A stretch of 64,000 nucleotides of DNA from Obrimoposthia wandeli (GCA_977020255.1 CDROCS010001101.1:372001-436000), one strand, 5' to 3'. Positions 47,947 through 59,487 are shown, numbered from the stretch's first letter. The notes: a model not told the origin generated them from the sequence alone. A program made the numbers and translations.

Positions 47947-48056
47947 AAGTCACGCTAGCGCTATCACTAGAGCAAAATATCAATGCCACGGAGTGATGAC
48001 ATTCTATCGATTATAAAAAAGTCGCTATATTGAGTAATTAGCGATCTATGAGTTTA

Positions 48057-48260
48057 TTAATTCATGGCGCTTTGAATGAGATCAATTAGCTCATTTTCTG
48101 TAGCGGGCTCATGTGATAAATCGAGTTCAGGTCCCGCGCCACCACTTAAAGAATAAACCTTAGAACCACAATGATCATAGTGATACCAAGTACCATCGAT
48201 ACATACGTCCGTGTAACATTTAGGATTGCGTAATAATTCCATCTTTACCACCTTAATCAT
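48057..48260 (-). CDS. small Cys/His-containing hypothetical protein
   Basis: 67 aa ORF (CYTDVC...HYDHC) with its own promoter and terminator signals. Confidence 0.7.
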   Translation of the reverse strand: MIKVVKMELLRNPKCYTDVCIDGTWYHYDHCGSKVYSLSGGAGPELDLSHEPATENELIDLIQSAMN

Positions 48261-48292
48261 GTGTTGAGTTTTTTTACAATCTGTTCACATTA

Positions 48293-48335
48293 AATATAAA
48301 CGCACATCCCTATTAACGCTATTGATGCAGATCAA
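48293..48335 (-). promoter_or_regulatory. FNR class II promoter of the 67-aa gene
   Basis: TTGAT-GCAG-ATCAA at 48322-48335 (perfect); -10 TATATT at 48298-48293 on the minus strand, about 30 bp from the box centre. Confidence 0.7.
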
Positions 48336-48425
48336 GTAACACTTTGTTTCACCATCCCTGCTCACTATATTTTACATACTTGCAGCATGGGCACAGCTTT
48401 AGTCGATGTCTACTCTGCCATTTAG

Positions 48426-49124
48426 TTAGTTAATTCGCGTGATCACCAAACGCCCAACCTGCCCAGCAATACGATGCTCAGGTAATAGTACCGATGCAGG
48501 ATCATCCGCCTGTGTTACCAGTCCGGGATGACGAGTTACTTTATCCATCACATCATCTCGTAACACGTTATAACCTTCTCCACCATCCGCGGGTCCCGGA
48601 ATACTCCCAGCCGCTTCACTGTTAGCTTCTGTACCTGCATCATAAACAGGTAAGCTGTAAGTCATACTATTCCCTACTGCTAAACTGCTAATGTCGATAC
48701 TATTTAATCCCGTGAATGCATCATTGGTATTAACTAACATACTACCGAATGACAGTTTCATTGCATGACTTTGATTTGCACTGATCGTCAGCAATTCATT
48801 ACTACCAGGTCCAATCGCACTCGCACCAGACATTGCCACATCCCCAGTACTGAACAAAGCAACTAACTCAGCGTTGCTCCCGCTTTCAGCCATATTCTCT
48901 AAGGTGCTGCTGGCCGGTGTACCTACTGACCACAAATTAGCAGCTGACTGATGTAACGCTAACAACACTGGAGAAAAAGGTTGCCCAGCAGTATCGTTAT
49001 AAACTGTAACTTGATATTCAAGTGTGGCCTGCGTACTACTATTATTGTCATCACCACATGCGCTAAGCCCCGTTGCTAATAATGTAACGCCCAAAAACTT
49101 TTTACTCAATATTGAAATAGCCAT
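48426..49124 (-). CDS. spondin-domain lipoprotein
   Basis: Lipobox LSAC; QPFSP, MLVNTNDAF, YDAGTEAN. Confidence 0.88.
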   Translation of the reverse strand: MAISILSKKFLGVTLLATGLSACGDDNNSSTQATLEYQVTVYNDTAGQPFSPVLLALHQSAANLWSVGTPASSTLENMAESGSNAELVALFSTGDVAMSGASAIGPGSNELLTISANQSHAMKLSFGSMLVNTNDAFTGLNSIDISSLAVGNSMTYSLPVYDAGTEANSEAAGSIPGPADGGEGYNVLRDDVMDKVTRHPGLVTQADDPASVLLPEHRIAGQVGRLVITRIN

Positions 49125-49138
49125 AAATCCTCCGGCGT

Positions 49139-49837
49139 TTATTTAACGGTAACAACCACTTTGGCTACTGGGTTTAACCAACGGTGAATTCGGCTATCGA
49201 GATCACTCACCCCACCATTAACATCACTATCGCCTATATTGCCTGGATGAATGTGAATATTACTGTTAGACGAAGATGTGGTCACGCCACTACCACCGGT
49301 ACCTCCGTTTGCCCCTGGATTTGCAGGTATTCCAGGTACCCCGGCAACACCACCGCCGTTAACAATTTCGTCATTAGCCTCTGTTCCCGCATCATAACCA
49401 TTCATATAAAAAGTATACGTACCCGCTTCGGTTGGGATCGCCCAACTGTCTTTCCCGACGAAACCATCGTTGGTAGGTAACATCATCGCAGCAATGGTCA
49501 ATACGTTATTACTACCCGTGTTTAAGTCTGTCACCACCGTATTATTCGATGGCGCGAGTAAACCTGCGGCAGGATTAGCAACTGAGATTGCAGAGACACT
49601 ATCTGCAATCGTGATTAAATCTGCAATAGCACCACCTTCAGCCATGGCCTGTAATGCTGGAGATGCACTTTTACCAACTTCAAATAGATGAACATCACTA
49701 GTATGAGCAGTAACAAGTAATGGCGTAAAATATATACCTTGAGTCAGGTTAGTGATACTTACATCAACTACAGCGGCTTGGCTTACAGTGCTAAGCGTTA
49801 ATAGCGGTAAAGCTAATAAAGATGATTTTAAATTCAT
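49139..49837 (-). CDS. spondin-domain secreted protein
   Basis: Signal peptide; ITNLTQGIYFTP, MMLPTNDGF, YDAGTEANDE. Confidence 0.88.
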   Translation of the reverse strand: MNLKSSLLALPLLTLSTVSQAAVVDVSITNLTQGIYFTPLLVTAHTSDVHLFEVGKSASPALQAMAEGGAIADLITIADSVSAISVANPAAGLLAPSNNTVVTDLNTGSNNVLTIAAMMLPTNDGFVGKDSWAIPTEAGTYTFYMNGYDAGTEANDEIVNGGGVAGVPGIPANPGANGGTGGSGVTTSSSNSNIHIHPGNIGDSDVNGGVSDLDSRIHRWLNPVAKVVVTVK

Positions 49838-50011: not shown

Positions 50012-51001
50012 TTACGTTAATACCTGATTAGCACAGGTATTCCCTGCACTAATGTCAGTTAAATTATTGAGAGTCGTTTGGGCAATACTAATTAATGCTT
50101 CTTTGGTCAAAAAAGCTTGATGGCCAGTAAAGATCACATTATGACAGGCAGATAATCGGCGGAAAGTGTCATCAGTAATGATTTCGCTAGAATGATCATT
50201 AAAGAATAAGTGCTCTTCCTCTTCATAAACATCTAAGCCTAGCCCCCCAATTCGGCCTGATTTTAACGCTTCAATGGCATCGTTCGCATCTAACAAACCA
50301 CCACGACTGGTATTAATAATCGTGACACCGTCTTTCATTAACGCGAACGTTTTTTCATTTAACAGATGCTTATTATCGGCCGTTAATGGGCAATGTAAAC
50401 TTATCACATCACTGTTAGTAAACAGCGTATCTAAGTCCACATATTCAGCCCCTAACGCAATAGCATGTTCAGAAGGATAAGGGTCAGAGGCTAAAATTTT
50501 ACAACCAAAGCCTTTAAAAATAGCCATGGTAGCGACACCTATTTTACCAGTACCAATAATACCAACCGTTTTACCGTGTAAATTAAACCCTACTAGACCT
50601 TGTAACGAGAAGTTAGCATCACGGGTGCGTTGATAAGCTTTATGAATACGGCGATTAAGTGTCATTAGCAAAGCAATAGCATGCTCGGCAACAGCCTCTG
50701 GCGAATAGGCTGGAACACGTACGATAGTGATGCCAAGCGCTTCAGCGCAATCTAAATCAATATTGTTAAAACCAGCACAGCGCATTGCAATACACTTTAT
50801 TCCCATGTCTTTCAGTTGATGTAAAACAGGGGCACTTAAATCATCATTAACGAAAGCACAAACAGCATCATATCCTTTAGCTAATACCGCTGTTTGTTGA
50901 TTTAATTGCGCATCAAAAAAATTAATACTGATAGGTTCAGAAATCAATGGTTCAAAATATTGAATATCATAACTGCGGGAACTAAACATAATCACTTTCA
51001 T
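50012..51001 (-). CDS. ldhA: D-lactate dehydrogenase (NAD-dependent)
   Basis: ATG 51001 with RBS GAGG gives 329 aa; RCAGFNN, GTGKIG, LHCPL, NTSRG, GHQAF. Confidence 0.92.
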   Translation of the reverse strand: MKVIMFSSRSYDIQYFEPLISEPISINFFDAQLNQQTAVLAKGYDAVCAFVNDDLSAPVLHQLKDMGIKCIAMRCAGFNNIDLDCAEALGITIVRVPAYSPEAVAEHAIALLMTLNRRIHKAYQRTRDANFSLQGLVGFNLHGKTVGIIGTGKIGVATMAIFKGFGCKILASDPYPSEHAIALGAEYVDLDTLFTNSDVISLHCPLTADNKHLLNEKTFALMKDGVTIINTSRGGLLDANDAIEALKSGRIGGLGLDVYEEEEHLFFNDHSSEIITDDTFRRLSACHNVIFTGHQAFLTKEALISIAQTTLNNLTDISAGNTCANQVLT

Positions 51002-51069
51002 AAAAGTGTTCCTCATATAAATTTATATTGCGGTTCAGTAGTGTACATACATTTGTTATATCGATGACG

Positions 51070-51534
51070 CTAACTTATAATGTTCTTTGACATATTATAG
51101 CCAGAAATAGCAAACCCCACTTCTTGATACAGTTTTAGCGCTCTTTGATTTTGGTAAGCAACTCGTAATTTAATTTGCCCAATACCAATCGATTTTAATT
51201 GTGACTCTAGCGCAATGATTGCCAATTTTCCATAACCATTATTACGGTTGTTGGAGAAAATGAAAAAGTCATAAATGAACGTCGATTTGTCATCTGTATT
51301 AATCGAATGCCATAAGTAACCAACCAATTCTGAATTCGACTCGATACACAACAATTCGTGATCGTTGGTTTCCAACCCATTAGGAAAGCTACGAAGCAGA
51401 TCTTGATTGGCTAATTCGACCGCCTTTTCCATTGAGTGGCCATAATTACCAGCAATTTCACGACTATAATCATCAATGAAATAGTCGCTATATGCGGGGT
51501 ATTCACTAGAAGTCATAGGTCTGAGTTGAATCAT
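51070..51534 (-). CDS. GNAT family acetyltransferase
   Basis: VGYLW, RNNGYG motif, NQRALKLY. Confidence 0.85.
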   Translation of the reverse strand: MIQLRPMTSSEYPAYSDYFIDDYSREIAGNYGHSMEKAVELANQDLLRSFPNGLETNDHELLCIESNSELVGYLWHSINTDDKSTFIYDFFIFSNNRNNGYGKLAIIALESQLKSIGIGQIKLRVAYQNQRALKLYQEVGFAISGYNMSKNIIS

Positions 51535-51577
51535 ATTTAATCCTTTAAACCATGAACTAAAAAAACGATAACACTTA

Positions 51578-51641
51578 AGCTTTCATCGGAACAAAACTCA
51601 GCTAAATAAATAACACCCTCGGGCTTTAGTTCTCGACGAAG
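51578..51641 (-). pseudogene. internal fragment of the methyltransferase gene at 54317-54892
   Basis: 58/64 identical to 54484-54547. Confidence 0.85.
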
Positions 51642-51696
51642 CCTCTATGGTTGTTGTGGCTTAATGAACCTGTACACTTAAAGAGTTGGGGATGAG

Positions 51697-52596
51697 TTAT
51701 ATCTCTTGATTCTCAGTAACATCTAAGAAATTTTCCGCATTCCAATTCTTAACATCGGCACTTAAGTCCTTTAGTAGCTCGTTAAATTCACTATTAGACA
51801 CGCCATTATCATCGATAATTGCTGACTCTCTCCACTTTTCTGAATGAGAGAGTTTTTCTCTTATAACCGCAGTGGCAATATCAATCCAAGTCGGCGGTGT
51901 AAAAGTAAAATTAAACGAAACAGCATCTGTAACGGCTTCGGTCATATGCCAAACGCCTCGTGGTACAAATAGAATTGAACCCGGTTCTAATATATATTCA
52001 ATACAATCTGCAGGGAATGCTTCTGGAAATTCTTTATCTGCATAACCTGCTAGCTCATGGTCAACTGGGTGGCCGATCACATGGCGAGTCATTGGATTAT
52101 TAATGGTTTTATTTTCTGCTAACCACCATTTTTTTGTGCCTTCTAATTGCACAACAAAATTATAATTCTGATCGAAATGAGGCGCATTGCCCTTGCCCGC
52201 TGGTGATGCGTAGACTAAGTTTCTAACGTAGGTCAACTCAGAGAAACCAATTTCCTTTCTGATTTTTTGATTCCACATGTCAAACTCAGGAATCATTCTA
52301 TTGACGTCATTAAAAAGAATGCAGTTACCACAATAATATTCATTAATCGCGTCTTCAGGAGAAACTGAAGTCTTTGAAATTTCATCTGCAACCTGTGGAT
52401 TAAAAACATCCACAGTGTCTTGCCAGTAAGCCGCAAGGTTTTCAACAGATTTAAGAAATGGAAGACCCATCAAATCTTTAAGGGATTCTGTATTACCATG
52501 GGATACAAAAGGTGTTTGAGACTCGAGTAACTTTAAAAATTCTTCTTTGGTGTTATCACCAATAAGTGACTGTAGATTGATTTCTGTATTACTCAT
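51697..52596 (-). CDS. JmjC/cupin 2-oxoglutarate-Fe(II) oxygenase (RoxA/YcfD-like)
   Basis: PHFD...GVWH facial triad, VQLEGTKKW, LEPGSILFVPRG; ATG 52596 preferred (ORF track 52623). Confidence 0.85.
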   Translation of the reverse strand: MSNTEINLQSLIGDNTKEEFLKLLESQTPFVSHGNTESLKDLMGLPFLKSVENLAAYWQDTVDVFNPQVADEISKTSVSPEDAINEYYCGNCILFNDVNRMIPEFDMWNQKIRKEIGFSELTYVRNLVYASPAGKGNAPHFDQNYNFVVQLEGTKKWWLAENKTINNPMTRHVIGHPVDHELAGYADKEFPEAFPADCIEYILEPGSILFVPRGVWHMTEAVTDAVSFNFTFTPPTWIDIATAVIREKLSHSEKWRESAIIDDNGVSNSEFNELLKDLSADVKNWNAENFLDVTENQEI

Positions 52597-52681
52597 ATTT
52601 AATTCGCGTAATTTAATGGTCAATAATGCGGACTATCGCATGAAACAAGCAATATGAAAACTAATAACGAAACAGATAACT

Positions 52682-52762
52682 ATCATATCCTTTAGCTAAT
52701 ATCGCTGTTTGTTGATTTCGCTGAGCATCAAAAAATATACCTCATATAAATTTATATTGCGG
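52682..52762 (-). pseudogene. relic of ldhA 5' region and its RBS/upstream sequence
   Basis: 52682-52735 is 49/54 identical to ldhA 50867-50920; 52740-52762 is identical to 51011-51033. Confidence 0.85.
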
Positions 52763-52913
52763 CTAAGGATAAAACGAACTGCATTTCCTTTTAAAGGACG
52801 TACTATATTTCAAATACTTGTCCACGCCATTTATCATCTATTTCTCTGCAATAACCAGAGATGTTTGACTCTTAGAAACACAAGCCTCCTACCTAGACTT
52901 GTAACACTTTGGT

Positions 52914-53456
52914 CTAAGTGGACTCTTCTGGGATCTCGAGTAAGAAATCAGTAACCCCCACATCACGACCTTGTTGATTTAACAACGTAGATAACTGACC
53001 TCGATGATGTGTTTGGTGATTAAATAAATGACAAAGTAACTCGCCAAAATTACGAGTACTAATAATACCTTTTGTATTTGAATATGCTAAGTTTTTAGTA
53101 AAGTCATTTGCACTAGCTTCATTATGAAGCCAATTAGATAACAATAAATCGACCTTTTCACGCGCTATTTTGAATGCACTAAACTCAGGAAAAAGTATAT
53201 CATTTAATCCTTTAGGTTTAGGCAGTTCAAGTACACCTTTAAGTTCGAAGTAATTACTTGAATGCGTAGAAAACCTTGATAGCCAAATAATGTCGCCAAC
53301 TAATATGTGATTAAGCGTTCCCATTATAGAAGTGAAATACGCGCCTAAATCTTCATTGGTTCTTTCATCACTTAATTTATCAATCACATCAGAAAATTGT
53401 GTGTTCATACGATGATTGTAATCTGCCATTAAAATAAAATGACCTAATAGATTCAT
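52914..53456 (-). CDS. DinB family protein
   Basis: YFTSIMGTLNHILVGDIIWL, HLFNHQTHHRGQ. Confidence 0.9.
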   Translation of the reverse strand: MNLLGHFILMADYNHRMNTQFSDVIDKLSDERTNEDLGAYFTSIMGTLNHILVGDIIWLSRFSTHSSNYFELKGVLELPKPKGLNDILFPEFSAFKIAREKVDLLLSNWLHNEASANDFTKNLAYSNTKGIISTRNFGELLCHLFNHQTHHRGQLSTLLNQQGRDVGVTDFLLEIPEEST

Positions 53457-53527
53457 TGCTACTCCGAGCTATATCAGTGGAACGTCACAGAATCAACAGT
53501 GAGTAGCCCCAATTAAATAAATTATCA

Positions 53528-54142
53528 CTATGCCTTAATTGCAACTAAAGCGCCTGTAGATACCATTATCGTACCAGCAGTTTTGTTGATTATTGATGAT
53601 GCATTTGGACTCTTTAACATTTTTTTAGCTCTTAGCGCTAATAATGCGTAGCAAATATTAACACTACCAAAAGCCACAGACGCAATCATCATGATAGAAA
53701 TTACATCATAGGCAGTTACTTGATTTACATTTATAAAAGCAGGGAATAGACCAACATAAAAAAGAATAGCTTTGGGGTTACCTAAATTTATCATTAACCC
53801 CGTTAATAAATTAGCCAATAAAGAAGACTCTTTAGATTCTTGAATGTCTTCAGCAGTCACTTTTGTTTTAAGCAAATTGACCCCTAGCCAGATGAGGTAA
53901 GCTGCACTTATATATTTGATGAATAAAAATGCAGCACCCATGATTTCAGATATGACAGATAAGCCAAATAACGCAAAAAGAATAAATAGAAAATCACCTA
54001 AAGCAATGCCAACGATCATCATTAATCCCCTACTGAATCCAGAAGAAAAAGTGCGGGCTATCACTGAGAATACGGCAGGACCAGGTACAATAGCAACGAT
54101 AAACATAGCGCCAAATAGGGCTAAAAGATCTCCGAATGACAA
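53528..54142 (-). CDS. LysE family translocator
   Basis: VPGP, GNPKAILFY, hydrophobic helices. Confidence 0.9.
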   Translation of the reverse strand: MSFGDLLALFGAMFIVAIVPGPAVFSVIARTFSSGFSRGLMMIVGIALGDFLFILFALFGLSVISEIMGAAFLFIKYISAAYLIWLGVNLLKTKVTAEDIQESKESSLLANLLTGLMINLGNPKAILFYVGLFPAFINVNQVTAYDVISIMMIASVAFGSVNICYALLALRAKKMLKSPNASSIINKTAGTIMVSTGALVAIKA

Positions 54143-54211
54143 TGTAATTTCCTTAAAGTATAAAGACTGCTTAGTACATTACCTTGCAGACAAAAATGAA
54201 TTTTAACGCTT

Positions 54212-54245
54212 ATTCACTAGACGTCATGGGTCTGAGTTGAATCGC
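54212..54245 (-). pseudogene. 5' stub of the GNAT gene at 51070-51534
   Basis: 30/32 identical to 51501-51532; start ATG changed to GCG and codon 12 TAC changed to TAA. Confidence 0.85.
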
Positions 54246-54278
54246 ATTTAATCCTTTAAAACCATTTATTTAAAAACA

Positions 54279-54322
54279 ACATAACACTTAAGCCTTCATT
54301 GGCTAAGTTAAGCTTGTTATAT
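54279..54322 (-). mobile_element. degenerate attC-like site
   Basis: Coding strand ATATAAC (contains the MTase stop codon)...GTTATGT, 44 bp, imperfect hairpin. Confidence 0.45.
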
Positions 54323-54892
54323 CGTTTTACGTGCGAATATGTGACTTGCATGGCTTGCATGTCCTGACATTGTTGAACTCTCAACTACTTGAGATTGCTC
54401 AACATTGAATCCATCGAGTATATCCTTAAGTTCCGATAACTGGCTGTGCCACATCGGGACTCCAGCACCAGAGGTAAATCGATAGCTTTCATCGGAACAG
54501 AACTCAGCTAAATAAAGAACACCATTAGGCTTTAGTACTCGACGAAGTTCTATCAATATTTGCTTGCGAAGGTCTTCGTTAGGGATACACGTGAAGACAG
54601 CGCAGGTAACAATTGAGTCAAACTCGTTATCTGCAAACGGCAGTCTCGAGCCTAAAATATGCCGTAAATCTAAATGTGAGTTCTCGATTAAGCCTCTATT
54701 TATCATTTCCTTTGAAGAATCGACCCCGATTAGATGCTTATAACCTAAATGATGAAGTTGATTTCCAATACGACCATAGCCGCAACCAAAATCAAGCACT
54801 TTAGCGTCTTGAGGTACAGTAGTTACAAAATCCTCAGCTAAAATTTCAAGATTGAAATCAACACTCTCTGCCACACTATCCCATTCGCTCAA
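54317..54892 (-). CDS. class I SAM-dependent methyltransferase
   Basis: VLDFGCGYG, GVDSS, LPFADNEFD, RVLKPNG. Confidence 0.9.
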   Translation of the reverse strand: MSEWDSVAESVDFNLEILAEDFVTTVPQDAKVLDFGCGYGRIGNQLHHLGYKHLIGVDSSKEMINRGLIENSHLDLRHILGSRLPFADNEFDSIVTCAVFTCIPNEDLRKQILIELRRVLKPNGVLYLAEFCSDESYRFTSGAGVPMWHSQLSELKDILDGFNVEQSQVVESSTMSGHASHASHIFARKTI

Positions 54893-54910
54893 TGAGTAAC
54901 TCCTTTAATC

Positions 54911-54942
54911 ATATAAGATCCAACTTGAATATCGGGTTATAA
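54911..54942 (-). mobile_element. degenerate attC-like half site
   Basis: Coding strand TTATAAC (HAD stop)-CCGAT-ATTCAAGT-TGGAT-CTTATAT; R''/5-bp spacer/L'' intact, L' missing. Confidence 0.55.
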
Positions 54943-55572
54943 GCCAATATATGCAAAAGCTTCGTTTTTCTTTTCAAAGTTTTTAATTGACTGATGATGT
55001 TCCAATTTATCACCAACTAAAACAAAGTTAACGCCTAACTCTTTACAAGCCTTTAAATCCCAACTTCCATCACCAAAATATGTAAATGATAACCGGACTT
55101 CTTTAACTGCTCTTTTTTCTGCAATCTTCATAATCTCGATTCTTGAATAGTGATCATTAGAGGATGCAATTGGAATACCTGAAATATCTATACCAGCGGA
55201 CTTCAACTTTAAAACGGCACTCTCATACCAACCGCCAGTTGCAAATGAAATAACGACATCATCGAGTTCTTTTAAATTGGCGATAAACATGGAAGCCCCT
55301 GTGATTTCACTAATTGGCTTTTCATCAACCCTAGTTTGAATTTTAGCTAAGAATAAATTTTTAATATTTTCAGTCACTGTATTGGTATTTTGAATGTTCT
55401 TTTCATTAAAAAACGCTTTGAGGATCCCTGCATCTGTTACATGTTTATAACGAGCCCAGTTTGTATCAATATCGAATCCAGTTACTTCTTTTACAGCCTC
55501 ACTAAAACACTCAGAGTCAAAATCATACGACTCAATAAGTGTTCCATCGATATCAAACATTATATGGGGCAT
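54937..55572 (-). CDS. HAD family hydrolase
   Basis: FDIDGTL, ATGG, FGDGSWD. Confidence 0.88.
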   Translation of the reverse strand: MPHIMFDIDGTLIESYDFDSECFSEAVKEVTGFDIDTNWARYKHVTDAGILKAFFNEKNIQNTNTVTENIKNLFLAKIQTRVDEKPISEITGASMFIANLKELDDVVISFATGGWYESAVLKLKSAGIDISGIPIASSNDHYSRIEIMKIAEKRAVKEVRLSFTYFGDGSWDLKACKELGVNFVLVGDKLEHHQSIKNFEKKNEAFAYIGL

Positions 55573-56105
55573 ATTGCTGACTCCTTTTTTTCACACCACT
55601 CACTACGAAGCACGCCATACTTAATTGAGTCGTAGTATTCACCTTGGTAATATCTCACTTTACGAATACAGGCCTCTTGTTTAAACCCCAATTTTTCTGC
55701 ACAAGCCATCATACGTGGATTTCCAGACCACGTTGTTAGGCCTACTCGTTCAATGTTTAACGTAGAAAATAGGTGAGTAACCCAATGTATTAATGCTTTA
55801 TAACCTAACCCTTGCCCCCAATATTTGGGATCATAAATAACAACACCAGCCTCTAACCATCGTGTTGATTCACACTCCCAATAAAAACTAACCGAACCTA
55901 CTGGTACGCCATTAACCATTATTGCTTGTGCTTTTTCACCCTCACATAAGTTTGAAAAAAGACCGCTTTTAAACTCAGCCAGTGTAGGCTTTGAGTAAGG
56001 AAAATATGGGCCGTTAAACTTTGTCCATAACTCATCACGTGTAATCAAATTATAAAATTGAGCAAGCTCATCGGGGCAAGTTGGTTTAAGTACTACATTT
56101 TCCAT
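55560..56105 (-). CDS. GNAT (RimJ/RimL-like) acetyltransferase
   Basis: YWGQGLG, TWSGNPRM, LGFKQEACIRK; 13-bp overlap with the HAD gene. Confidence 0.88.
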   Translation of the reverse strand: MENVVLKPTCPDELAQFYNLITRDELWTKFNGPYFPYSKPTLAEFKSGLFSNLCEGEKAQAIMVNGVPVGSVSFYWECESTRWLEAGVVIYDPKYWGQGLGYKALIHWVTHLFSTLNIERVGLTTWSGNPRMMACAEKLGFKQEACIRKVRYYQGEYYDSIKYGVLRSEWCEKKESAICPI

Positions 56106-56177
56106 CCATGACCTTTAATCTAGTAAGTTAAAGTTAAAAGGGACATAATTGAGTTATACCGTTTTACGTTTATACAT

Positions 56178-56438
56178 CTATTCAGTTTGATCACCGAAAC
56201 TCTCTATTATTTTGGTGCCACAAACATCACATATTAGATGCTTATCACGCAGGTCCATAAATGAAGCGGCTCGTCCAGCGCCCCAACCTGCTAAAAAAGC
56301 GGTCATAAACACTTTTATACGATCTTTTCTACTTTCAGGTCTAACGGCTGAATTCGAGATCCTAAGTAAGTGATGATTTCTATCAGCTTTACATTGCTGG
56401 CAATACCTTGACACCAATGTTGATTCATTATTATTCAT
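56178..56438 (-). CDS. small hypothetical protein with CxxC...CxxC zinc-ribbon pattern
   Basis: CQQC...H and CDVC; RBS AAGGA. Confidence 0.7.
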   Translation of the reverse strand: MNNNESTLVSRYCQQCKADRNHHLLRISNSAVRPESRKDRIKVFMTAFLAGWGAGRAASFMDLRDKHLICDVCGTKIIESFGDQTE

Positions 56439-56467
56439 AAATATCCTTTTTATTAGCTAAGCCACAA

Positions 56468-56510
56468 CGATAACCAACTTTTTTGATTCCGTTTAAGCAG
56501 TATGTTATGT
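56468..56510 (-). mobile_element. degenerate attC-like half site
   Basis: Coding strand ACATAAC (gene stop)-ATACT-GCTTAAAC...GTTATCG, 43 bp. Confidence 0.45.
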
Positions 56511-56852
56511 ATTAATTTTCAACTGTTCCAATTTCCATTTGCCAAGATTTTTATTCCACAATTCTTGGATCTGAAGCTTTAACCCTATGTGTTTACCACT
56601 AACTATTTCACAATAACCAACAACTTGAGTATGGTTTTCTTGCTCTTCATAAGTCACAATGGTCTCCATTTCAGGTTGAAACCAATCCCCGCGGTTAACC
56701 CTAGCTTGTATCTTTTTATAACGATTCCCTGAATCGATTATGCCGTTATCCACTACAATAATATTTTGGGACTCGTATTTCATTAAGCCTTCTACATCGC
56801 CACTCCTATAGCACGCCAACCATATTGTTCTAATTTCTTTTAAATCAACCAC
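56505..56852 (-). CDS. NTF2-like (DUF4440-like) small protein
   Basis: GTG start after GGAG; YRSGDVEGL, ELWNK..GKWKL. Confidence 0.65.
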   Translation of the reverse strand: MVDLKEIRTIWLACYRSGDVEGLMKYESQNIIVVDNGIIDSGNRYKKIQARVNRGDWFQPEMETIVTYEEQENHTQVVGYCEIVSGKHIGLKLQIQELWNKNLGKWKLEQLKINT

Positions 56853-56873
56853 TAAACAAGATCTCCGAATTAG

Positions 56874-56914
56874 GCGTAATGCTGCAATAACAGGTGTTGA
56901 TTGCTTTGTTATAC
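56874..56914 (-). mobile_element. attC-like site with collapsed central loop
   Basis: Coding strand GTATAAC-AAAGC-AATCAACA-CC-TGTTATT-GCAGC-ATTACGC. All four boxes have VCR-type 5/5 spacing and an extrahelical base, but the loop is only 2 nt and R' is ATT instead of GTT. Confidence 0.7.
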
Positions 56915-56936
56915 CCGTACTAAAACTGTCCTTAAA

Positions 56937-57287
56937 CTAGGAAGTAACTAATAACAAAACACTACCTAGAAATGCAGGTATTCCTGATATAAACATAACT
57001 AAGCCAAATTGATAGTTCTGTCTTTTTTGTTCATGAAAATCAGATTCAAAATCATGACCTGAAACCATTTTATTAGTTTTATTCGCCGCAGGATCTTGTG
57101 ACCAATTACGACTTTGACTACTCCCCTCCCAAGTTAAGCTAGCAACTCCCCAGATAATGATAACGATGAAAAATAGGAAATCCATCAAACTTGTTGAGTT
57201 GAAAGCAGTCATGTACTTAGAGAGAATAAACACAGTTAAAGCTGCTAATAGGTTAGTAATAGCAACAACTTTAAACAGATTTAGCAT
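56937..57287 (-). CDS. hypothetical membrane protein (three hydrophobic segments)
   Basis: RBS AAGGA, 116 aa. Confidence 0.7.
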   Translation of the reverse strand: MLNLFKVVAITNLLAALTVFILSKYMTAFNSTSLMDFLFFIVIIIWGVASLTWEGSSQSRNWSQDPAANKTNKMVSGHDFESDFHEQKRQNYQFGLVMFISGIPAFLGSVLLLVTS

Positions 57288-57298
57288 TAGGGTTCCTT

Positions 57299-57352
57299 CC
57301 TTAACAGCCTTTTATAATGTTATAAGCATCGTCTTGATTGCAATTCTTAATG
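57299..57352 (-). mobile_element. degenerate attC-like site
   Basis: Coding strand CATTAAG-AATTGC-AATCAAGA...GTTAAGG immediately before the RBS and ATG of the next gene. Confidence 0.4.
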
Positions 57353-57659
57353 AGAACGTAGTAACAACTTGAAATACAATACAATATAATAAAATACAAT
57401 AACTTACCACTAAAGGTTTAGAGTTACCAATTCATTTGAATGAGTACCTATTGCGTAAAGCTCGGAATTGGGAAATTAAATATAACTGAAAGATCACTAG
57501 GCATGAGCAGACCGACGGTAAATCAACTGGCGTGATCTACGACTGAGTAATGACGTTAGCTAAAAAAGGAGGGCATTTCGGCTTAGCATTATGACACCAC
57601 TCCAGGCCTGAATAAGAATGACTTGGAGTAATTGTGCTAGCCGATAGTACTATTGCTTC

Positions 57660-57839
57660 TTACTCTATCGTTAAGGCCTCAATAATATGCACTTGACCAC
57701 TTGAGGTTGTGACTGAGGTAATATCATTAGATTGTAATACCTTTAAAATTTCAGATGGTAATTCAATAACTTCAGTTGAATTAAAATTGAAGGCACATTT
57801 CAATGCGCTATACTCTTCTGCCGTTAAGATATTTAACAT
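57660..57839 (-). CDS. 59-aa ORF, possibly the 5' part of a decayed gene
   Basis: RBS AAGGAAG, ATG 57839; MLNILTAEEYSALKCAFNFNSTEVIELPSEILKVLQSNDITSVTTSSGQVHIIEALTIE*; below the ORF-track cutoff. Confidence 0.4.
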   Translation of the reverse strand: MLNILTAEEYSALKCAFNFNSTEVIELPSEILKVLQSNDITSVTTSSGQVHIIEALTIE

Positions 57840-58087
57840 GGCTCTTCCTTGAAAGATCTATAAAACTATACTACTTAAATAGTAGTGCATTTTTTTAAAT
57901 GTATAGTTTTTATTAAAGAAATATTATTTAATCTTTAGAAACTTCCCTTCAAGTACTCGTTTAAGCCTAACTAATTGTAGTGATTCATTAAGTGGCAAAA
58001 TACATAACGAAACATCAGTTTTGTAATACCAAAGAGATTACTATCATAGAATGAATAAGTAGAAGTTTTAGCAAGGTAAGGGGTAAG

Positions 58088-58116
58088 AATAGCTTAGGCT
58101 GATCACCCTAAGCTAT
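58088..58116. terminator. hairpin downstream of DUF2956 gene
   Basis: AATAGCTTAGG / CCTAAGCTATT. Confidence 0.55.
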
Positions 58117-58155
58117 TGGTCTACGACGGAATAAAACTAAGCCGTAAAATAATAT

Positions 58156-58503
58156 CTAACCGATGACAAGCACGCCATTTTGTACGAGATAACCAGCAAA
58201 ACCAGCCCAGCTTAGTGCTAATAATGCCCAAGGTAGTCGGCTTGATCTTACTTGCTTTTGCTCACTTTCAATCTCAACATTACTTTCTTGTTCTGCTGCC
58301 GCCGCATTCGATCTTATTTTTTGTTTTTTCTGCTTATCGAGCTGGCGAGATTTAGCCTTATGCTGTTTTTTGTACTCAGCGATGCCCTTCTCGATACCAG
58401 CTGCGATCAATTTAGTCTGTTCGCGACTTTGACCTGGTTTTTTAATACCGCTAGCAATACGTGTAGATTCAGCTTGCACTTCTGTTGATGCTTTCTGTGT
58501 CAT
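58156..58503 (-). CDS. DUF2956 family protein
   Basis: KKPGQSREQTKLIAAGIEKGIAEYKKQHKAK.R..DK; C-terminal LPWALLALSWAGF. Confidence 0.85.
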   Translation of the reverse strand: MTQKASTEVQAESTRIASGIKKPGQSREQTKLIAAGIEKGIAEYKKQHKAKSRQLDKQKKQKIRSNAAAAEQESNVEIESEQKQVRSSRLPWALLALSWAGFAGYLVQNGVLVIG

Positions 58504-58722: not shown

Positions 58723-59487
58723 ATGGATATCAAAGGAACCTGTATCTCATCAATAGTCGATGAGCACGGCCCCATTTATGTTTACGAAACCAAGAAAAGC
58801 CGCATTCTTAGCTTTGATGGCAAGATTTATCAAAGCTGCATGAAAATAAATAACATTAATGGATTACCTTTAGGTTATACCAAGGCGATGATGACAGGTT
58901 TGTTTTTTATTCCGACACTATCTACAACAGCAACAGCAACGGCGACTATCATGGGGCTCGGTGCAGGCTCTATGGCAAAGAACTTGCTCAATAGCTTCCC
59001 CGAGTTAAAGGTTCACGCGGTTGAATACCGTGAAGCAGTGGCTAAGACAGCAAGAGAGTTCTTCTATTTACCTGATACTGACCGCCTTGTTGTGCATATA
59101 GACGACGCGGTTAATCACATGAAAAATACCGACGTGAAAAGCGATATCATCTTTTCAGACCTATATAACTCAGATGGTATGGAACCCAAACAAGTACAAG
59201 CATCTTACTTGCGTGATTGTAAAAACGCGCTCAACGACCAAGGTGTGCTGGTACTCAATATCTGCCATACAACACATGAATTACAACAAGAATTAGATGA
59301 TTTACTTGCGCTGGAATTTGACAACCAATTACTGAGTTTCGCTGTAGACAGTAGCAACACCATCGTACTGGCATTCAAGAACGATATGCCTTCGATAAAC
59401 AGAGAAGATCTACTGATTAAAAGTAACTGGTTACAAGAAAAGATGAATATTCCGATGGAACGTTATGCCGAATTACTCTTGGCTTGA
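58723..59487 (+). CDS. spermidine synthase-like SAM-dependent methyltransferase
   Basis: MGLGAGSM, VEYRE, IDDAV, FSDLY, GVLVLN. Confidence 0.85.
   Translation: MDIKGTCISSIVDEHGPIYVYETKKSRILSFDGKIYQSCMKINNINGLPLGYTKAMMTGLFFIPTLSTTATATATIMGLGAGSMAKNLLNSFPELKVHAVEYREAVAKTAREFFYLPDTDRLVVHIDDAVNHMKNTDVKSDIIFSDLYNSDGMEPKQVQASYLRDCKNALNDQGVLVLNICHTTHELQQELDDLLALEFDNQLLSFAVDSSNTIVLAFKNDMPSINREDLLIKSNWLQEKMNIPMERYAELLLA

What the first reader, a model, noticed from the sequence alone, without database searches (positions are those of the whole stretch)
51070..57430. Fossil integron-like cassette array with shortened and mutated attC sites and no integrase
SEEN: eleven annotated small genes, all on the minus strand, lie between ldhA and the DUF2956 gene (GNAT, JmjC, DinB, LysE, methyltransferase, HAD plus GNAT, zinc-ribbon ORF, NTF2-like, membrane protein, 59-aa ORF). 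The 56874-56914 spacer reads GTATAAC-5bp-AATCAACA-CC-TGTTATT-5bp-ATTACGC on the coding strand. That is R''-L''-L'-R' with one extrahelical base, but the loop is only 2 nt and the core GTT is changed to ATT. Four genes end with the stop codon inside a TAAC box: JmjC 51697, MTase 54317, HAD 54937 and the NTF2-like gene 56505. Half sites occur at 54911-54942 (L'' ATTCAAG, as in aadA-type attC), 54279-54322, 56468-56510, 57299-57352 and more weakly 57397-57428. ESTABLISHED: functional attC sites are roughly 57-141 bp, need GTT at R', often overlap the cassette stop codon, and carry this type of cargo; attC clusters lacking an integrase (CALINs) are known. INFERENCE: these are cassettes fixed in the chromosome. 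Most sites are only about 32-54 bp and carry a different lesion each. This could reflect locking-in of cassettes by attC collapse, or an undescribed family of mini-att sites used by an integrase acting in trans.
Basis: partly seen in the sequence, partly recalled or inferred. Interest (0 to 1): 0.75.

Follow-up and report, generated by a model that had tools for sequence, protein, structure and literature searches.

The report
Decayed integron cassette array near ldhA
This 7-kb block of small accessory genes in a Moritella-like marine bacterium is a real but eroded integron cassette array; sister genomes keep full recombination sites at the same places, so we can see how deletions locked mobile gene cassettes into the chromosome.

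Summary
The second reading (a new family of working mini-att sites) is not.

The window is Moritella-like. Moritella sp. JT01 and a Moritella MAG have the DUF2956 gene and ldhA about 60 nt apart. Here 7.1 kb with eleven co-oriented genes lies between them.

I built a covariance model from 20 genuine attC sites of Moritella integrons. The best sequence-profile hit is 56462-56508, which matches only the 5' half of an attC.

Sister genomes carry the same cassettes at this locus or elsewhere, with full attC sites scoring 34-88 bits. Alignments show a different lesion at each window site:
- a 63-nt internal deletion plus GTT to ATT
- a 47-nt loss of the 3' half
- a loss of about 100 nt
- one complete loss that fuses two cassettes

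The genes stay under purifying selection. No intI lies in the window or on its contig.

This is a degraded CALIN with fused cassettes, a known kind. Its value is the site-by-site record of decay. Other notes of this scan report a similar decayed array about 28 kb further along the same contig.

The parts
58156..58503 (-). DUF2956 gene (orf115). A conserved core gene that marks the proximal edge of the hotspot.
   Evidence: Pfam PF11169, E 2.7e-35. It sits directly beside ldhA in Moritella sp. JT01 and a Moritella MAG.
58088..58117 (-). Conserved hairpin downstream of the DUF2956 gene. Homology among sister genomes ends about 40-70 nt beyond it (near 58044-58092), and that is where the array begins.
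   Evidence: Inverted repeat I24; five-genome alignment; BLAST end points.
57980..58051 (-). Relic of the 3' end of a gene that is intact (243 aa) in G006. Copies of this piece lie near attC sites on other contigs.
   Evidence: 86% match to L114 inside an open frame there. Matches at G000:C933 and C5637, each within about 1.3 kb of an attC hit.
57660..57839 (-). 59-aa ORF. It and its surroundings (57315-58043) have no counterpart in 13 Moritellaceae genomes.
57308..57326 (-). 5' boundary of the memb116 cassette. An R''-like box is directly followed by a mutated core (ATT where a copy in G007 has the GTT of the upstream attC).
   Evidence: Four-copy alignment: homology among copies starts exactly at the TTAT of the R' core. 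nhmmer finds an attC 3' end just upstream of the G007 copy.
56937..57287 (-). Membrane-protein cassette gene (116 aa).
   Evidence: 92-96% identical copies in G004, G012 and G007, dN/dS about 0.10-0.14.
56874..56914 (-). Collapsed attC of the memb116 cassette. The R''/L''/L'/R' boxes are kept, 63 inner nt are lost between 7-nt direct repeats, and the core GTT is changed to ATT.
   Evidence: Best covariance-model hit of the window, 21.2 bits. Long forms at L113:4637-4742, L112:5603-5706 and in G003. G004 has the short form with GTT.
56505..56852 (-).
   Evidence: G004 and G003 keep only relics of its 3' end.
56456..56509 (-). Half attC. The 5' half (model positions 2-49) of a Moritella-type attC overlaps the stop codon; the 3' arm and R' are gone. 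G004 and G003 are in the same state.
   Evidence: Best nhmmer hit of the window, E 0.022; alignment. A metatranscriptome contig joins the same 40 nt to the rest of a full site (table 7).
56178..56438 (-). 86-aa cassette gene (Zn86).
   Evidence: 85-97% identical copies in G004, G003 and G006.
56137..56159 (-). Stub of the Zn86 attC (R'' box and the start of L''). The window lacks about 100 nt that G004 keeps, including a GTTACGC core.
   Evidence: Alignment; L107:7568-7647; a roughly 95-nt attC-like site read by eye from the alignment, not model-scored, follows the G006 copy.
55560..56105 (-). GNAT2 gene, fused to the next cassette. Its attC is wholly deleted, and its frame now runs into the HAD leader and overlaps the HAD start by 13 nt.
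   Evidence: G004 has GNAT2 plus a spacer of about 108 nt (GNAT2 stop to MTase start), and G003 has HAD without GNAT2. The junction is at 55576-55603.
54937..55572 (-). HAD hydrolase cassette gene.
   Evidence: Pfam. An 86% homologue at G000:C2866:4337-4978 abuts a full attC of 84 bits at C2866:4243-4342.
54924..54942 (-). R''-like box at the HAD stop codon. The rest of the site is missing.
   Evidence: No model hit; alignment with G003 and G004.
54317..54892 (-). Methyltransferase cassette gene.
   Evidence: Pfam; 91% identical protein in G004.
54279..54322 (-). 44-nt mini site after the methyltransferase gene. R'' and R' (GTT kept) are present, but the spacer/L-box architecture is not canonical. 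G004 shares it; G007 has a 29-nt form.
   Evidence: 10.7 bits; alignment; fold z -2.1.
54211..54260 (-). Relic of the GNAT1 5' end and its leader (copy of 51500-51549).
   Evidence: Repeat D3, 92%.
53528..54142 (-). LysE-family exporter cassette gene.
   Evidence: Pfam; 97% identical protein in G007.
53478..53525 (-). Half attC after LysE. The 5' half is kept; a 47-nt deletion removed L' and R'.
   Evidence: The orthologous G007 site L109:9252-9351 is a full attC, 34 bits, E 2.5e-6; alignment.
52914..53456 (-). DinB-family cassette gene. No attC remnant was recognised downstream.
   Evidence: Pfam; alignment with G007.
52682..52767 (-). Relic of the ldhA 5' end and its leader. It marks the old array/ldhA junction of a G007-type arrangement.
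   Evidence: Repeats D2 and D6; G007 order is DinB then ldhA.
51651..52678 (-). JmjC unit, 97% identical to G003. Its stop codon sits in an R''-like box (51683-51702) and its downstream part is cut at 51651.
   Evidence: Metagenome contigs continue as in G003 (table 7).
51566..51641 (-). 64-nt internal methyltransferase relic, followed by the L'-R' end of the mini site (GTTATCG).
   Evidence: Repeats D1 and D8; alignment.
51070..51534 (-). GNAT1 cassette gene, the last one before ldhA.
   Evidence: Pfam; 93-96% identical proteins in G004 and G007.
51032..51061 (-). Stub of the GNAT1 attC (R'' box and about 20 nt), joined to the ldhA leader.
   Evidence: In G007 the same gene is followed by a site of about 78 nt ending in GCGTTAAT (L109:8502-8579).
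50012..51016 (-). ldhA, the distal edge of the hotspot.
   Evidence: Pfam; 94% identical to Moritella sp. JT01.

Best explanation
The stretch is a degraded, integrase-less integron cassette array (an eroded CALIN). It sits in a hypervariable hotspot between the DUF2956 gene and ldhA of a Moritella-like chromosome.

Each gene or gene pair arrived as an integron cassette with a Moritella-type attC of about 80-105 nt. In this lineage the attC hairpins have since been cut down by ordinary deletions, several of them between short direct repeats. The results are:
- one collapsed 41-nt site that has also lost its GTT core
- one 44-nt mini site
- half sites and stubs that keep only the 5' arm (one long half with a partial L' trace, one clean half, two short stubs)
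- one complete loss that fuses two cassettes

Without paired R boxes and a core, an integron integrase cannot excise these units, so the genes are locked in place. They continue to evolve as ordinary chromosomal genes under purifying selection.

Shown: homology to genuine attC sites, full sites on the same cassettes in sister genomes, the deletions themselves, and the absence of intI nearby. Inferred: that slippage across the hairpin caused the deletions, that the sites are now inactive, and how the array first reached this place.
For: (1) Empty site. JT01 and a Moritella MAG have DUF2956 and ldhA 62 nt apart.

(2) Variable content at the same locus. The orders are:
- G004: memb116-Zn86-GNAT2-MTase-GNAT1-ldhA
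- G007: three other cassettes, then MTase'-GNAT1-LysE-DinB-ldhA
- G003: other cassettes, then a memb116 relic-Zn86-HAD-x-JmjC
- G006: a 19-kb unrelated island

(3) Genuine attC reference. Six of 13 Moritellaceae genomes have intI. Twenty attC sites beside it align with 17 of 23 pairs covarying. They give model R1.

(4) Model hits. R1 finds full attC sites inside the sister arrays at this locus: G007 at 74.5, 88.4, 34.1 and 34.0 bits; G003 at 67.6, 59.4 and 27.3 bits. G012 has a 74.6-bit site in the same array about 420 nt downstream of a memb116 copy, after an intervening 82-aa ORF; the memb116 copy's own long site scores weakly (14 bits in the G007 copy). In the window its best hit is 56874-56913, and the best HMM hit is 56462-56508.

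(5) Lesions seen by alignment. These are a 63-nt deletion between TTATTAC repeats, plus ATT for GTT; a 47-nt deletion after LysE; a loss of about 100 nt after Zn86; the GNAT2-HAD fusion; and the GNAT1 stub.

(6) Cassette boundary. The memb116 unit starts exactly at the TT of an upstream R' core.

(7) A HAD homologue abuts an 84-bit attC elsewhere in the assembly.

(8) dN/dS is 0.04-0.25 for nine of ten cassette genes.

(9) No intI was found in the window by tblastn or on contig C1101.

(10) Public metagenome contigs show further deletion variants of the same array.
Against: - Only one window site reaches a convincing model score. IntegronFinder itself was not run, and its general model might call none of them.
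- Folding energies do not support hairpins at most sites.
- No attC remnant was found after DinB or JmjC.
- The long site after memb116 scores only 14 bits with R1 and has two possible R' ends, so the exact parse of the collapsed site is uncertain.
- Inactivity of the mini sites is inferred, not tested. Deleting the variable terminal structure of a VCR site barely affects recombination (PMC2727003), so a short site with GTT could still work.
- The assembly is a 1.35-Gb mixture, so 'no integrase in this genome' cannot be proven.
Confidence: 0.85

Rival explanations
1. The short sites are a working family of minimal att sites that an integron integrase encoded elsewhere recombines in trans. On this view the array is still a live, if unusual, cassette platform.
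For: - Two short sites keep both R boxes, and one keeps GTT (54279-54322; also the G004 form of the memb116 site).
- G004 does encode an intI 660 kb away.
- A VCR site with its 65-nt terminal structure replaced by three bases still recombines (PMC2727003).
- Gene content differs between genomes.
Against: - The sites share no common short architecture. Each is a different truncation of a different long site.
- Four sites lack R' altogether.
- The best site has ATT.
- The NTF2 and memb116 losses in sister genomes left gene relics, which is deletion and not site-specific excision.
- The 44-nt site lacks a symmetric unpaired spacer.
- No Moritella-type intI was found in the assembly.
Confidence: 0.07
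2. This is an ordinary recombination hotspot or genomic islet, filled by homologous recombination and illegitimate events, and its resemblance to attC is coincidental.
For: - Segmental duplications and relics (ldhA 5' end, GNAT1 5' end, methyltransferase fragment) show non-site-specific rearrangement.
- G006 holds a non-cassette island at the same place.
- Most window spacers score no better than background.
Against: - The two best attC-model hits of the whole window fall in the array, on the coding strand, at stop codons.
- Orthologous spacers in G007 and G003 are full attC sites with E down to 3e-21.
- The same genes sit in other attC arrays.
- The memb116 unit boundary falls at an R' core.
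Confidence: 0.05
3. Origin variant: the array is what remains of a complete integron whose intI and attI once lay next to the DUF2956 gene and were later deleted. The alternative origin is cassettes inserted in trans at a secondary (attG-type) site.
For: - Intact attC sites lie at the DUF2956 end and decayed ones at the ldhA end in G007 and G003. This is the polarity expected if new cassettes entered at that end.
- The window has 700 nt of unexplained sequence and a gene relic there.
Against: - There is no intI pseudogene trace in the window.
- In Moritella the integron platform sits at another conserved locus, next to a 916-aa gene.
- IntI-mediated insertion outside att sites is documented (10.1101/2022.09.11.507474), and most CALINs lack nearby intI pseudogenes (PMC4889954).
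Confidence: 0.15

Closest known systems
CALIN (cluster of attC sites lacking an integron integrase; Cury et al. 2016, PMC4889954)
   Same: A co-oriented array of small accessory genes derived from integron cassettes, with no intI nearby, in a genus where other genomes carry a complete integron. The homologous arrays of G007 and G003 at this locus are textbook CALINs with 3-4 full attC sites.
   Different: In the window almost every attC has decayed below what a covariance model detects, so the array would probably not be called a CALIN by the standard definition (two or more detected attC sites).
Fused gene cassettes of class 1 integrons (partial or total loss of an attC; PMC4670013)
   Same: Loss of the attC between two cassettes locks them together. 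GNAT2-HAD here is such a fusion, and the upstream frame runs into the next cassette's leader.
   Different: Here the process has hit nearly every junction of a chromosomal array in an environmental bacterium, and the ancestral states are still visible in sister genomes.
Sedentary chromosomal integron of Moritella (intI plus an array of about 95-100-nt attC sites, as in G004, G012, G013 and G009)
   Same: The same attC sequence family (R'' of the TATAACAAG type, R' of the GGCGTTA type), stop codons overlapping R'', and the same kind of cargo.
   Different: A different chromosomal locus, with no intI or attI, and the sites are truncated.
Cassettes inserted at non-classical genomic sites (attG; SALIN) by IntI acting in trans (10.1101/2022.09.11.507474)
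   Same: It offers a route by which cassettes could enter an intergenic region that has no attI, such as the DUF2956/ldhA spacer.
   Different: It was not shown here. The original insertion junctions are no longer recognisable.

Membership tests
Integron gene cassette | An ORF followed by an attC site, with the stop codon often inside or next to R'' | tested here: met
   The stops of the JmjC, MTase, HAD and 115-aa genes lie in TAAC boxes. Remnants of attC follow memb116, the 115-aa gene, Zn86, MTase, LysE and GNAT1. The same genes have full attC sites in sister genomes.
Integron gene cassette | Unit boundaries at the G/TT of the R' core | tested here: inconclusive
   Met for the memb116 unit: homology among four copies begins at the TTAT of an upstream R'. 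Other boundaries are blurred by deletions.
CALIN (Cury et al. 2016) | At least two attC sites detected by a covariance model, within 4 kb of each other | tested here: inconclusive
   With my Moritella-specific model, only 56874-56913 passes (E 0.005); 54279-54321 has E 4. IntegronFinder's own model was not available. The feature is met in the homologous arrays of G007 and G003.
CALIN (Cury et al. 2016) | No integron integrase gene nearby | tested here: met
   No TIGR02249 hit on contig C1101. tblastn of a Moritella IntI against the window gives nothing below E 0.6.
Functional attC site | Complementary R''/R' boxes with conserved AAC and GTT | tested here: not met
   56874-56914 has ATT where G004 has GTT. 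The sites after the 115-aa gene, Zn86, LysE, GNAT1 and HAD have no R'. Only 54279-54322 keeps both boxes with GTT.
Functional attC site | L boxes with an extrahelical base and an unpaired central spacer on both arms | tested here: inconclusive
   56874-56914 can be written with 5-nt spacers and one unpaired base in L'', but the predicted fold is no better than shuffles. 54279-54322 folds without a symmetric spacer.
Functional attC site | Recombined by an integron integrase | not testable with these tools
   This needs a conjugation or excision assay.
Complete integron | intI with attI and Pc adjacent to the array | tested here: not met
   In Moritella genomes intI lies at another locus, beside a conserved 916-aa gene.
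Fused gene cassettes | Two cassette ORFs joined by loss of the intervening attC | tested here: met
   GNAT2 and HAD overlap by 13 nt. G004 keeps a spacer of about 108 nt (GNAT2 stop to MTase start) after GNAT2, and G003 has HAD with its own leader.

The most novel reading that the evidence does not exclude
Hairpin-internal deletion can shrink an attC to about 42-44 nt while keeping the R and L boxes and the GTT core. Examples are the memb116 site as found in G004 and the site after the methyltransferase gene. On this reading, such sub-minimal sites are still recombined by a Moritella IntI. The DUF2956/ldhA spacer would then be a second, integrase-less cassette platform served in trans. The lower size limit of natural attC sites would fall well below the roughly 57 nt now accepted.
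Probability: 0.1. Interest if true: 0.6.

Novelty: new member of a known kind. Interest (0 to 1): 0.42.

Why it matters
Integrase-less cassette clusters are common in genomes, but how they age is poorly documented, because detection tools see only intact attC sites.

This locus offers a natural series across sister genomes: empty site, array with full sites, collapsed site, half site, fused cassettes. The lesions are resolved to the base. It shows that cassettes can become ordinary chromosomal genes through small deletions in the attC hairpin while selection keeps the genes. It also shows that such arrays drop below the reach of standard integron finders, so cassette-derived genes are probably undercounted.

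The locus also supplies defined natural substrates (full, 42-nt and 41-nt ATT versions of one site) for testing what an attC minimally needs.

Tried and rejected
- Rfam scan of the window: only two tRNAs, and no attC family exists there.
- DNA folding of bottom strands against shuffles: not discriminating. Verified full attC sites of this AT-rich family have z between -0.2 and +0.9, so a weak fold says nothing.
- Looking for the window organism's own integrase:
  - The assembly is a 1.35-Gb mixture.
  - Its four full intI genes lie on other contigs and are only 41-46% identical to the G004-type Moritella IntI.
  - The conserved neighbour gene of the Moritella integron has two 95-96% orthologues, on C410 and C3203, with no intI hit listed beside them.
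  - Linkage of these contigs to C1101 could not be settled.
- I considered that the 76-nt repeat at 57983-58058 was an attI-like element. It is the 3' end of a gene that is intact in G006.
- I considered clean cassette excision as the cause of NTF2 absence in G004. I rejected it because a relic of the gene's 3' end remains.
- NCBIfam and Pfam gave no specific function for the 86-, 115-, 116- and 59-aa ORFs.
- I did not use the large protein searches, since the question did not depend on them.

Full report
**What is there.** The window comes from a Moritella-like gammaproteobacterium. Its ldhA product is 94% identical to that of Moritella sp. JT01 and 83-88% identical to those of Psychromonas. 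The contig, C1101, belongs to a 1.35-Gb mixed assembly.

Eleven ORFs, all on the minus strand, lie between ldhA (50012-51016) and a DUF2956 gene (58156-58503). Pfam supports GNAT, JmjC, DinB, LysE, class I methyltransferase, HAD, a second GNAT and DUF2956.

The sequence at 56874-56914 and the four stop codons inside TAAC boxes are exactly as described.

**The block is an insertion in a hypervariable hotspot.** In Moritella sp. JT01 and a Moritella MAG the DUF2956 gene and ldhA are 62 nt apart. Other Moritellaceae genomes have different fillings at the same place:
- G004: memb116-Zn86-GNAT2-MTase-GNAT1-ldhA.
- G007: three unrelated small ORFs, then MTase'-GNAT1-LysE-DinB-ldhA.
- G003: several unrelated ORFs, then a memb116 relic-Zn86-HAD-x-JmjC, with no ldhA.
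- G006: a 19-kb non-cassette island with GNAT1 fragments.

So gene order is not fixed in the genus.

**A reference for genuine attC sites.** Six of 13 family genomes encode an integron integrase above the TIGR02249 cut-off. Upstream of it, G004 has an array of repeats about 95-100 nt long. I collected 20 full sites from four genomes. Their alignment folds into the expected R/L-box hairpin, and 17 of 23 pairs show compensatory change. From this I built covariance model R1.

**Scoring the window.** With filters off, the best R1 hit in the whole 64 kb, both strands, is 56874-56913 on the minus strand. It scores 21.2 bits, E about 0.005 (rough calibration). It aligns end to end with the model, but three bases stand in place of 62 inner positions. 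Nothing outside the array exceeds 12.5 bits; the only other hit above that (13 bits) lies inside the array, over the memb116 start, and is not credible.

A sequence-only profile of the same alignment gives its best hit at 56462-56508(-), E 0.022. That hit covers model positions 2-49 only.

Site 54279-54321(-) scores 10.7 bits (E 4), and 53437-53529(-) scores 9.3 bits.

Folding energies are uninformative. Even sister-genome sites that R1 scores at 34 bits fold no better than shuffles.

**Sister genomes keep the full sites.** R1 finds full attC sites inside the homologous arrays:
- G007: 74.5, 88.4 and 34.1 bits after the three proximal ORFs, and 34.0 bits between LysE and DinB.
- G003: 67.6, 59.4 and 27.3 bits.
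- G012: 74.6 bits in the same array as a memb116 copy, about 420 nt downstream of it and just after an intervening 82-aa ORF. The memb116 copies' own long sites score weakly with R1 (14 bits in G007).
- G006: 38.7 and 82.1 bits in the array that holds a Zn86 copy.

Within the assembly, an 86% homologue of the HAD gene on contig C2866 abuts an 84-bit attC. Contig C1101 itself carries three isolated full sites far from the window.

**Each window site is a different truncation.**

(a) memb116. Copies in G007 (second locus), G012 and G003 carry a long site of about 80-105 nt. The window and G004 forms equal that site minus 63 nt lying between two copies of TTATTAC. G004 ends in GTTATGC and the window in ATTACGC. 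G003 has the long form at this very locus, so the collapse happened in place.

(b) LysE. Compared with G007, the window lacks 47 nt comprising L' and R'.

(c) The 115-aa gene. Only the 5' half remains, and G004 and G003 are in the same state, so this lesion is older. A metatranscriptome contig joins the same 40 nt to what looks like the rest of a full site (table 7).

(d) Zn86. The window keeps 23 nt. G004 keeps about 80 nt, ending in GTTACGC, though its R'' has AGC.

(e) GNAT2. Its site is gone, and the frame runs into the HAD leader and overlaps the HAD start.

(f) GNAT1. A stub of about 30 nt is joined to the ldhA leader. G007 has about 78 nt ending in GCGTTAAT.

(g) MTase. A 44-nt site with both R boxes and GTT is shared with G004; G007 has a 29-nt form.

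(h) No remnant was recognised after DinB or JmjC.

The 5' edge of the memb116 unit coincides with the TT of an upstream R' core in the G007 copy. That core is mutated to ATT in the window and to TTT in G004.

**Deletion, not excision, drives recent change.** G004 lacks the 115-aa gene but keeps about 20 nt of its 3' part. G003 keeps a broken memb116 and the last codons of the 115-aa gene.

The window contains relics of an ldhA 5' end, a GNAT1 5' end and a methyltransferase fragment. It reads as a G004-type arrangement and a G007-type arrangement joined around the JmjC unit.

Public metagenome and metatranscriptome contigs that match the array at 90-100% show further variants. These include loss of GNAT1, of GNAT2 and of the methyltransferase, and a 49-nt further deletion in the LysE remnant. 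Contigs from RNA libraries cover much of the array, but they do not prove transcription.

**The genes are maintained.** Against their sister orthologues, dN/dS is 0.04-0.25 for nine cassette genes and 0.55 for GNAT2 at very low divergence. Their dS (0.05-0.23) is at or below that of the flanking ldhA and DUF2956 genes.

**Integrase.** No intI hit lies on C1101, and no trace appears in the window by tblastn. The four full intI genes of the assembly lie on other contigs and are 41-46% identical to the G004-type Moritella enzyme.

Two contigs carry 95-96% orthologues of the gene that flanks the Moritella integron, with no intI listed beside them. Because the assembly is a mixture, absence from this organism cannot be proven.

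**Comparison with what is known.**
- Integrase-less attC clusters (CALINs) and their possible origins are described in PMC4889954. The origins discussed are loss of intI, rearrangement, and insertion at secondary sites.
- Efficient IntI-driven insertion outside att sites is reported in 10.1101/2022.09.11.507474.
- Fused cassettes produced by partial or total attC loss are known in class 1 integrons (PMC4670013).
- Removing the variable terminal structure of a VCR site hardly changes recombination (PMC2727003). A collapsed site that keeps its boxes and GTT is therefore not necessarily dead, and this is the basis of the novel case.
- That the G of the core triplet is required is from my own knowledge of the field and was not tested here.

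**Verdict.** This is a real feature. It is a new member of a known kind. Its modest but real value is as a base-resolved decay series for attC sites.

Other notes of this scan report a similar decayed array and a repeat at cassette joints about 28 kb beyond the window on the same contig. I did not examine them.

Noticed in passing
window 48426-49837: Two tandem paralogous 232-aa ORFs with a Spondin_N domain lie just downstream of ldhA. They are absent from G004, where ldhA is followed directly by the 48020-48400 region. This is a second indel at the same locus.
   Followed up: partly
window 50867-51641 and 52682-54547: Three repeat pairs of 91-92% identity (ldhA 5' end, GNAT1 5' end with leader, methyltransferase fragment). 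The array reads as a G004-type and a G007-type arrangement joined around the JmjC unit. The JmjC unit is itself 97% identical to G003, closer than its neighbours are.
   Followed up: partly
window 58723-59487 (+): In JT01 and the Moritella MAG, a spermidine-synthase-like methyltransferase gene lies on the far side of ldhA. Here it lies beyond the DUF2956 gene, so the hotspot has also seen a rearrangement of core genes.
   Followed up: no
L108 (G003:C2:200000-215000): G003 has no ldhA at this locus. The JmjC unit is followed, after about 80 nt, by the homologue of window 48054-48335.
   Followed up: no
G000:C253:3004160-3020694 and 3512999-3528195: A large contig of a different genus (its copy of the integron-neighbour gene is only 74% identical) carries dozens of attC sites that score 50-100 bits with the Moritella model. 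It also has one full intI and one intI broken by stop codons. The same attC family therefore spans genera in this sample.
   Followed up: no
G000:C410:274773-282235 and C3203:17364-18773: Two contigs hold 95-96% orthologues of the gene that flanks the Moritella integron. At least two Moritella-like strains therefore seem to be present in the assembly. C410 has attC sites 3 kb away, but no intI hit was listed.
   Followed up: no
L108 9269-9323 (G003) and L109 7968-7996 (G007): Sister genomes also have very short sites: 55 nt at 27 bits, and a 29-nt perfect R''/R' hairpin. G003 also has a TAACGAGCGTTAG junction after HAD that equals the ends of the G004 GNAT2 site with its interior removed. Collapse of attC interiors recurs in the genus.
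   Followed up: partly
window 57440-57640: The 370-nt non-coding stretch between the 59-aa ORF and memb116 has locally higher G+C and a hairpin followed by a T run. It has no Rfam hit and no counterpart in 13 family genomes.
   Followed up: no
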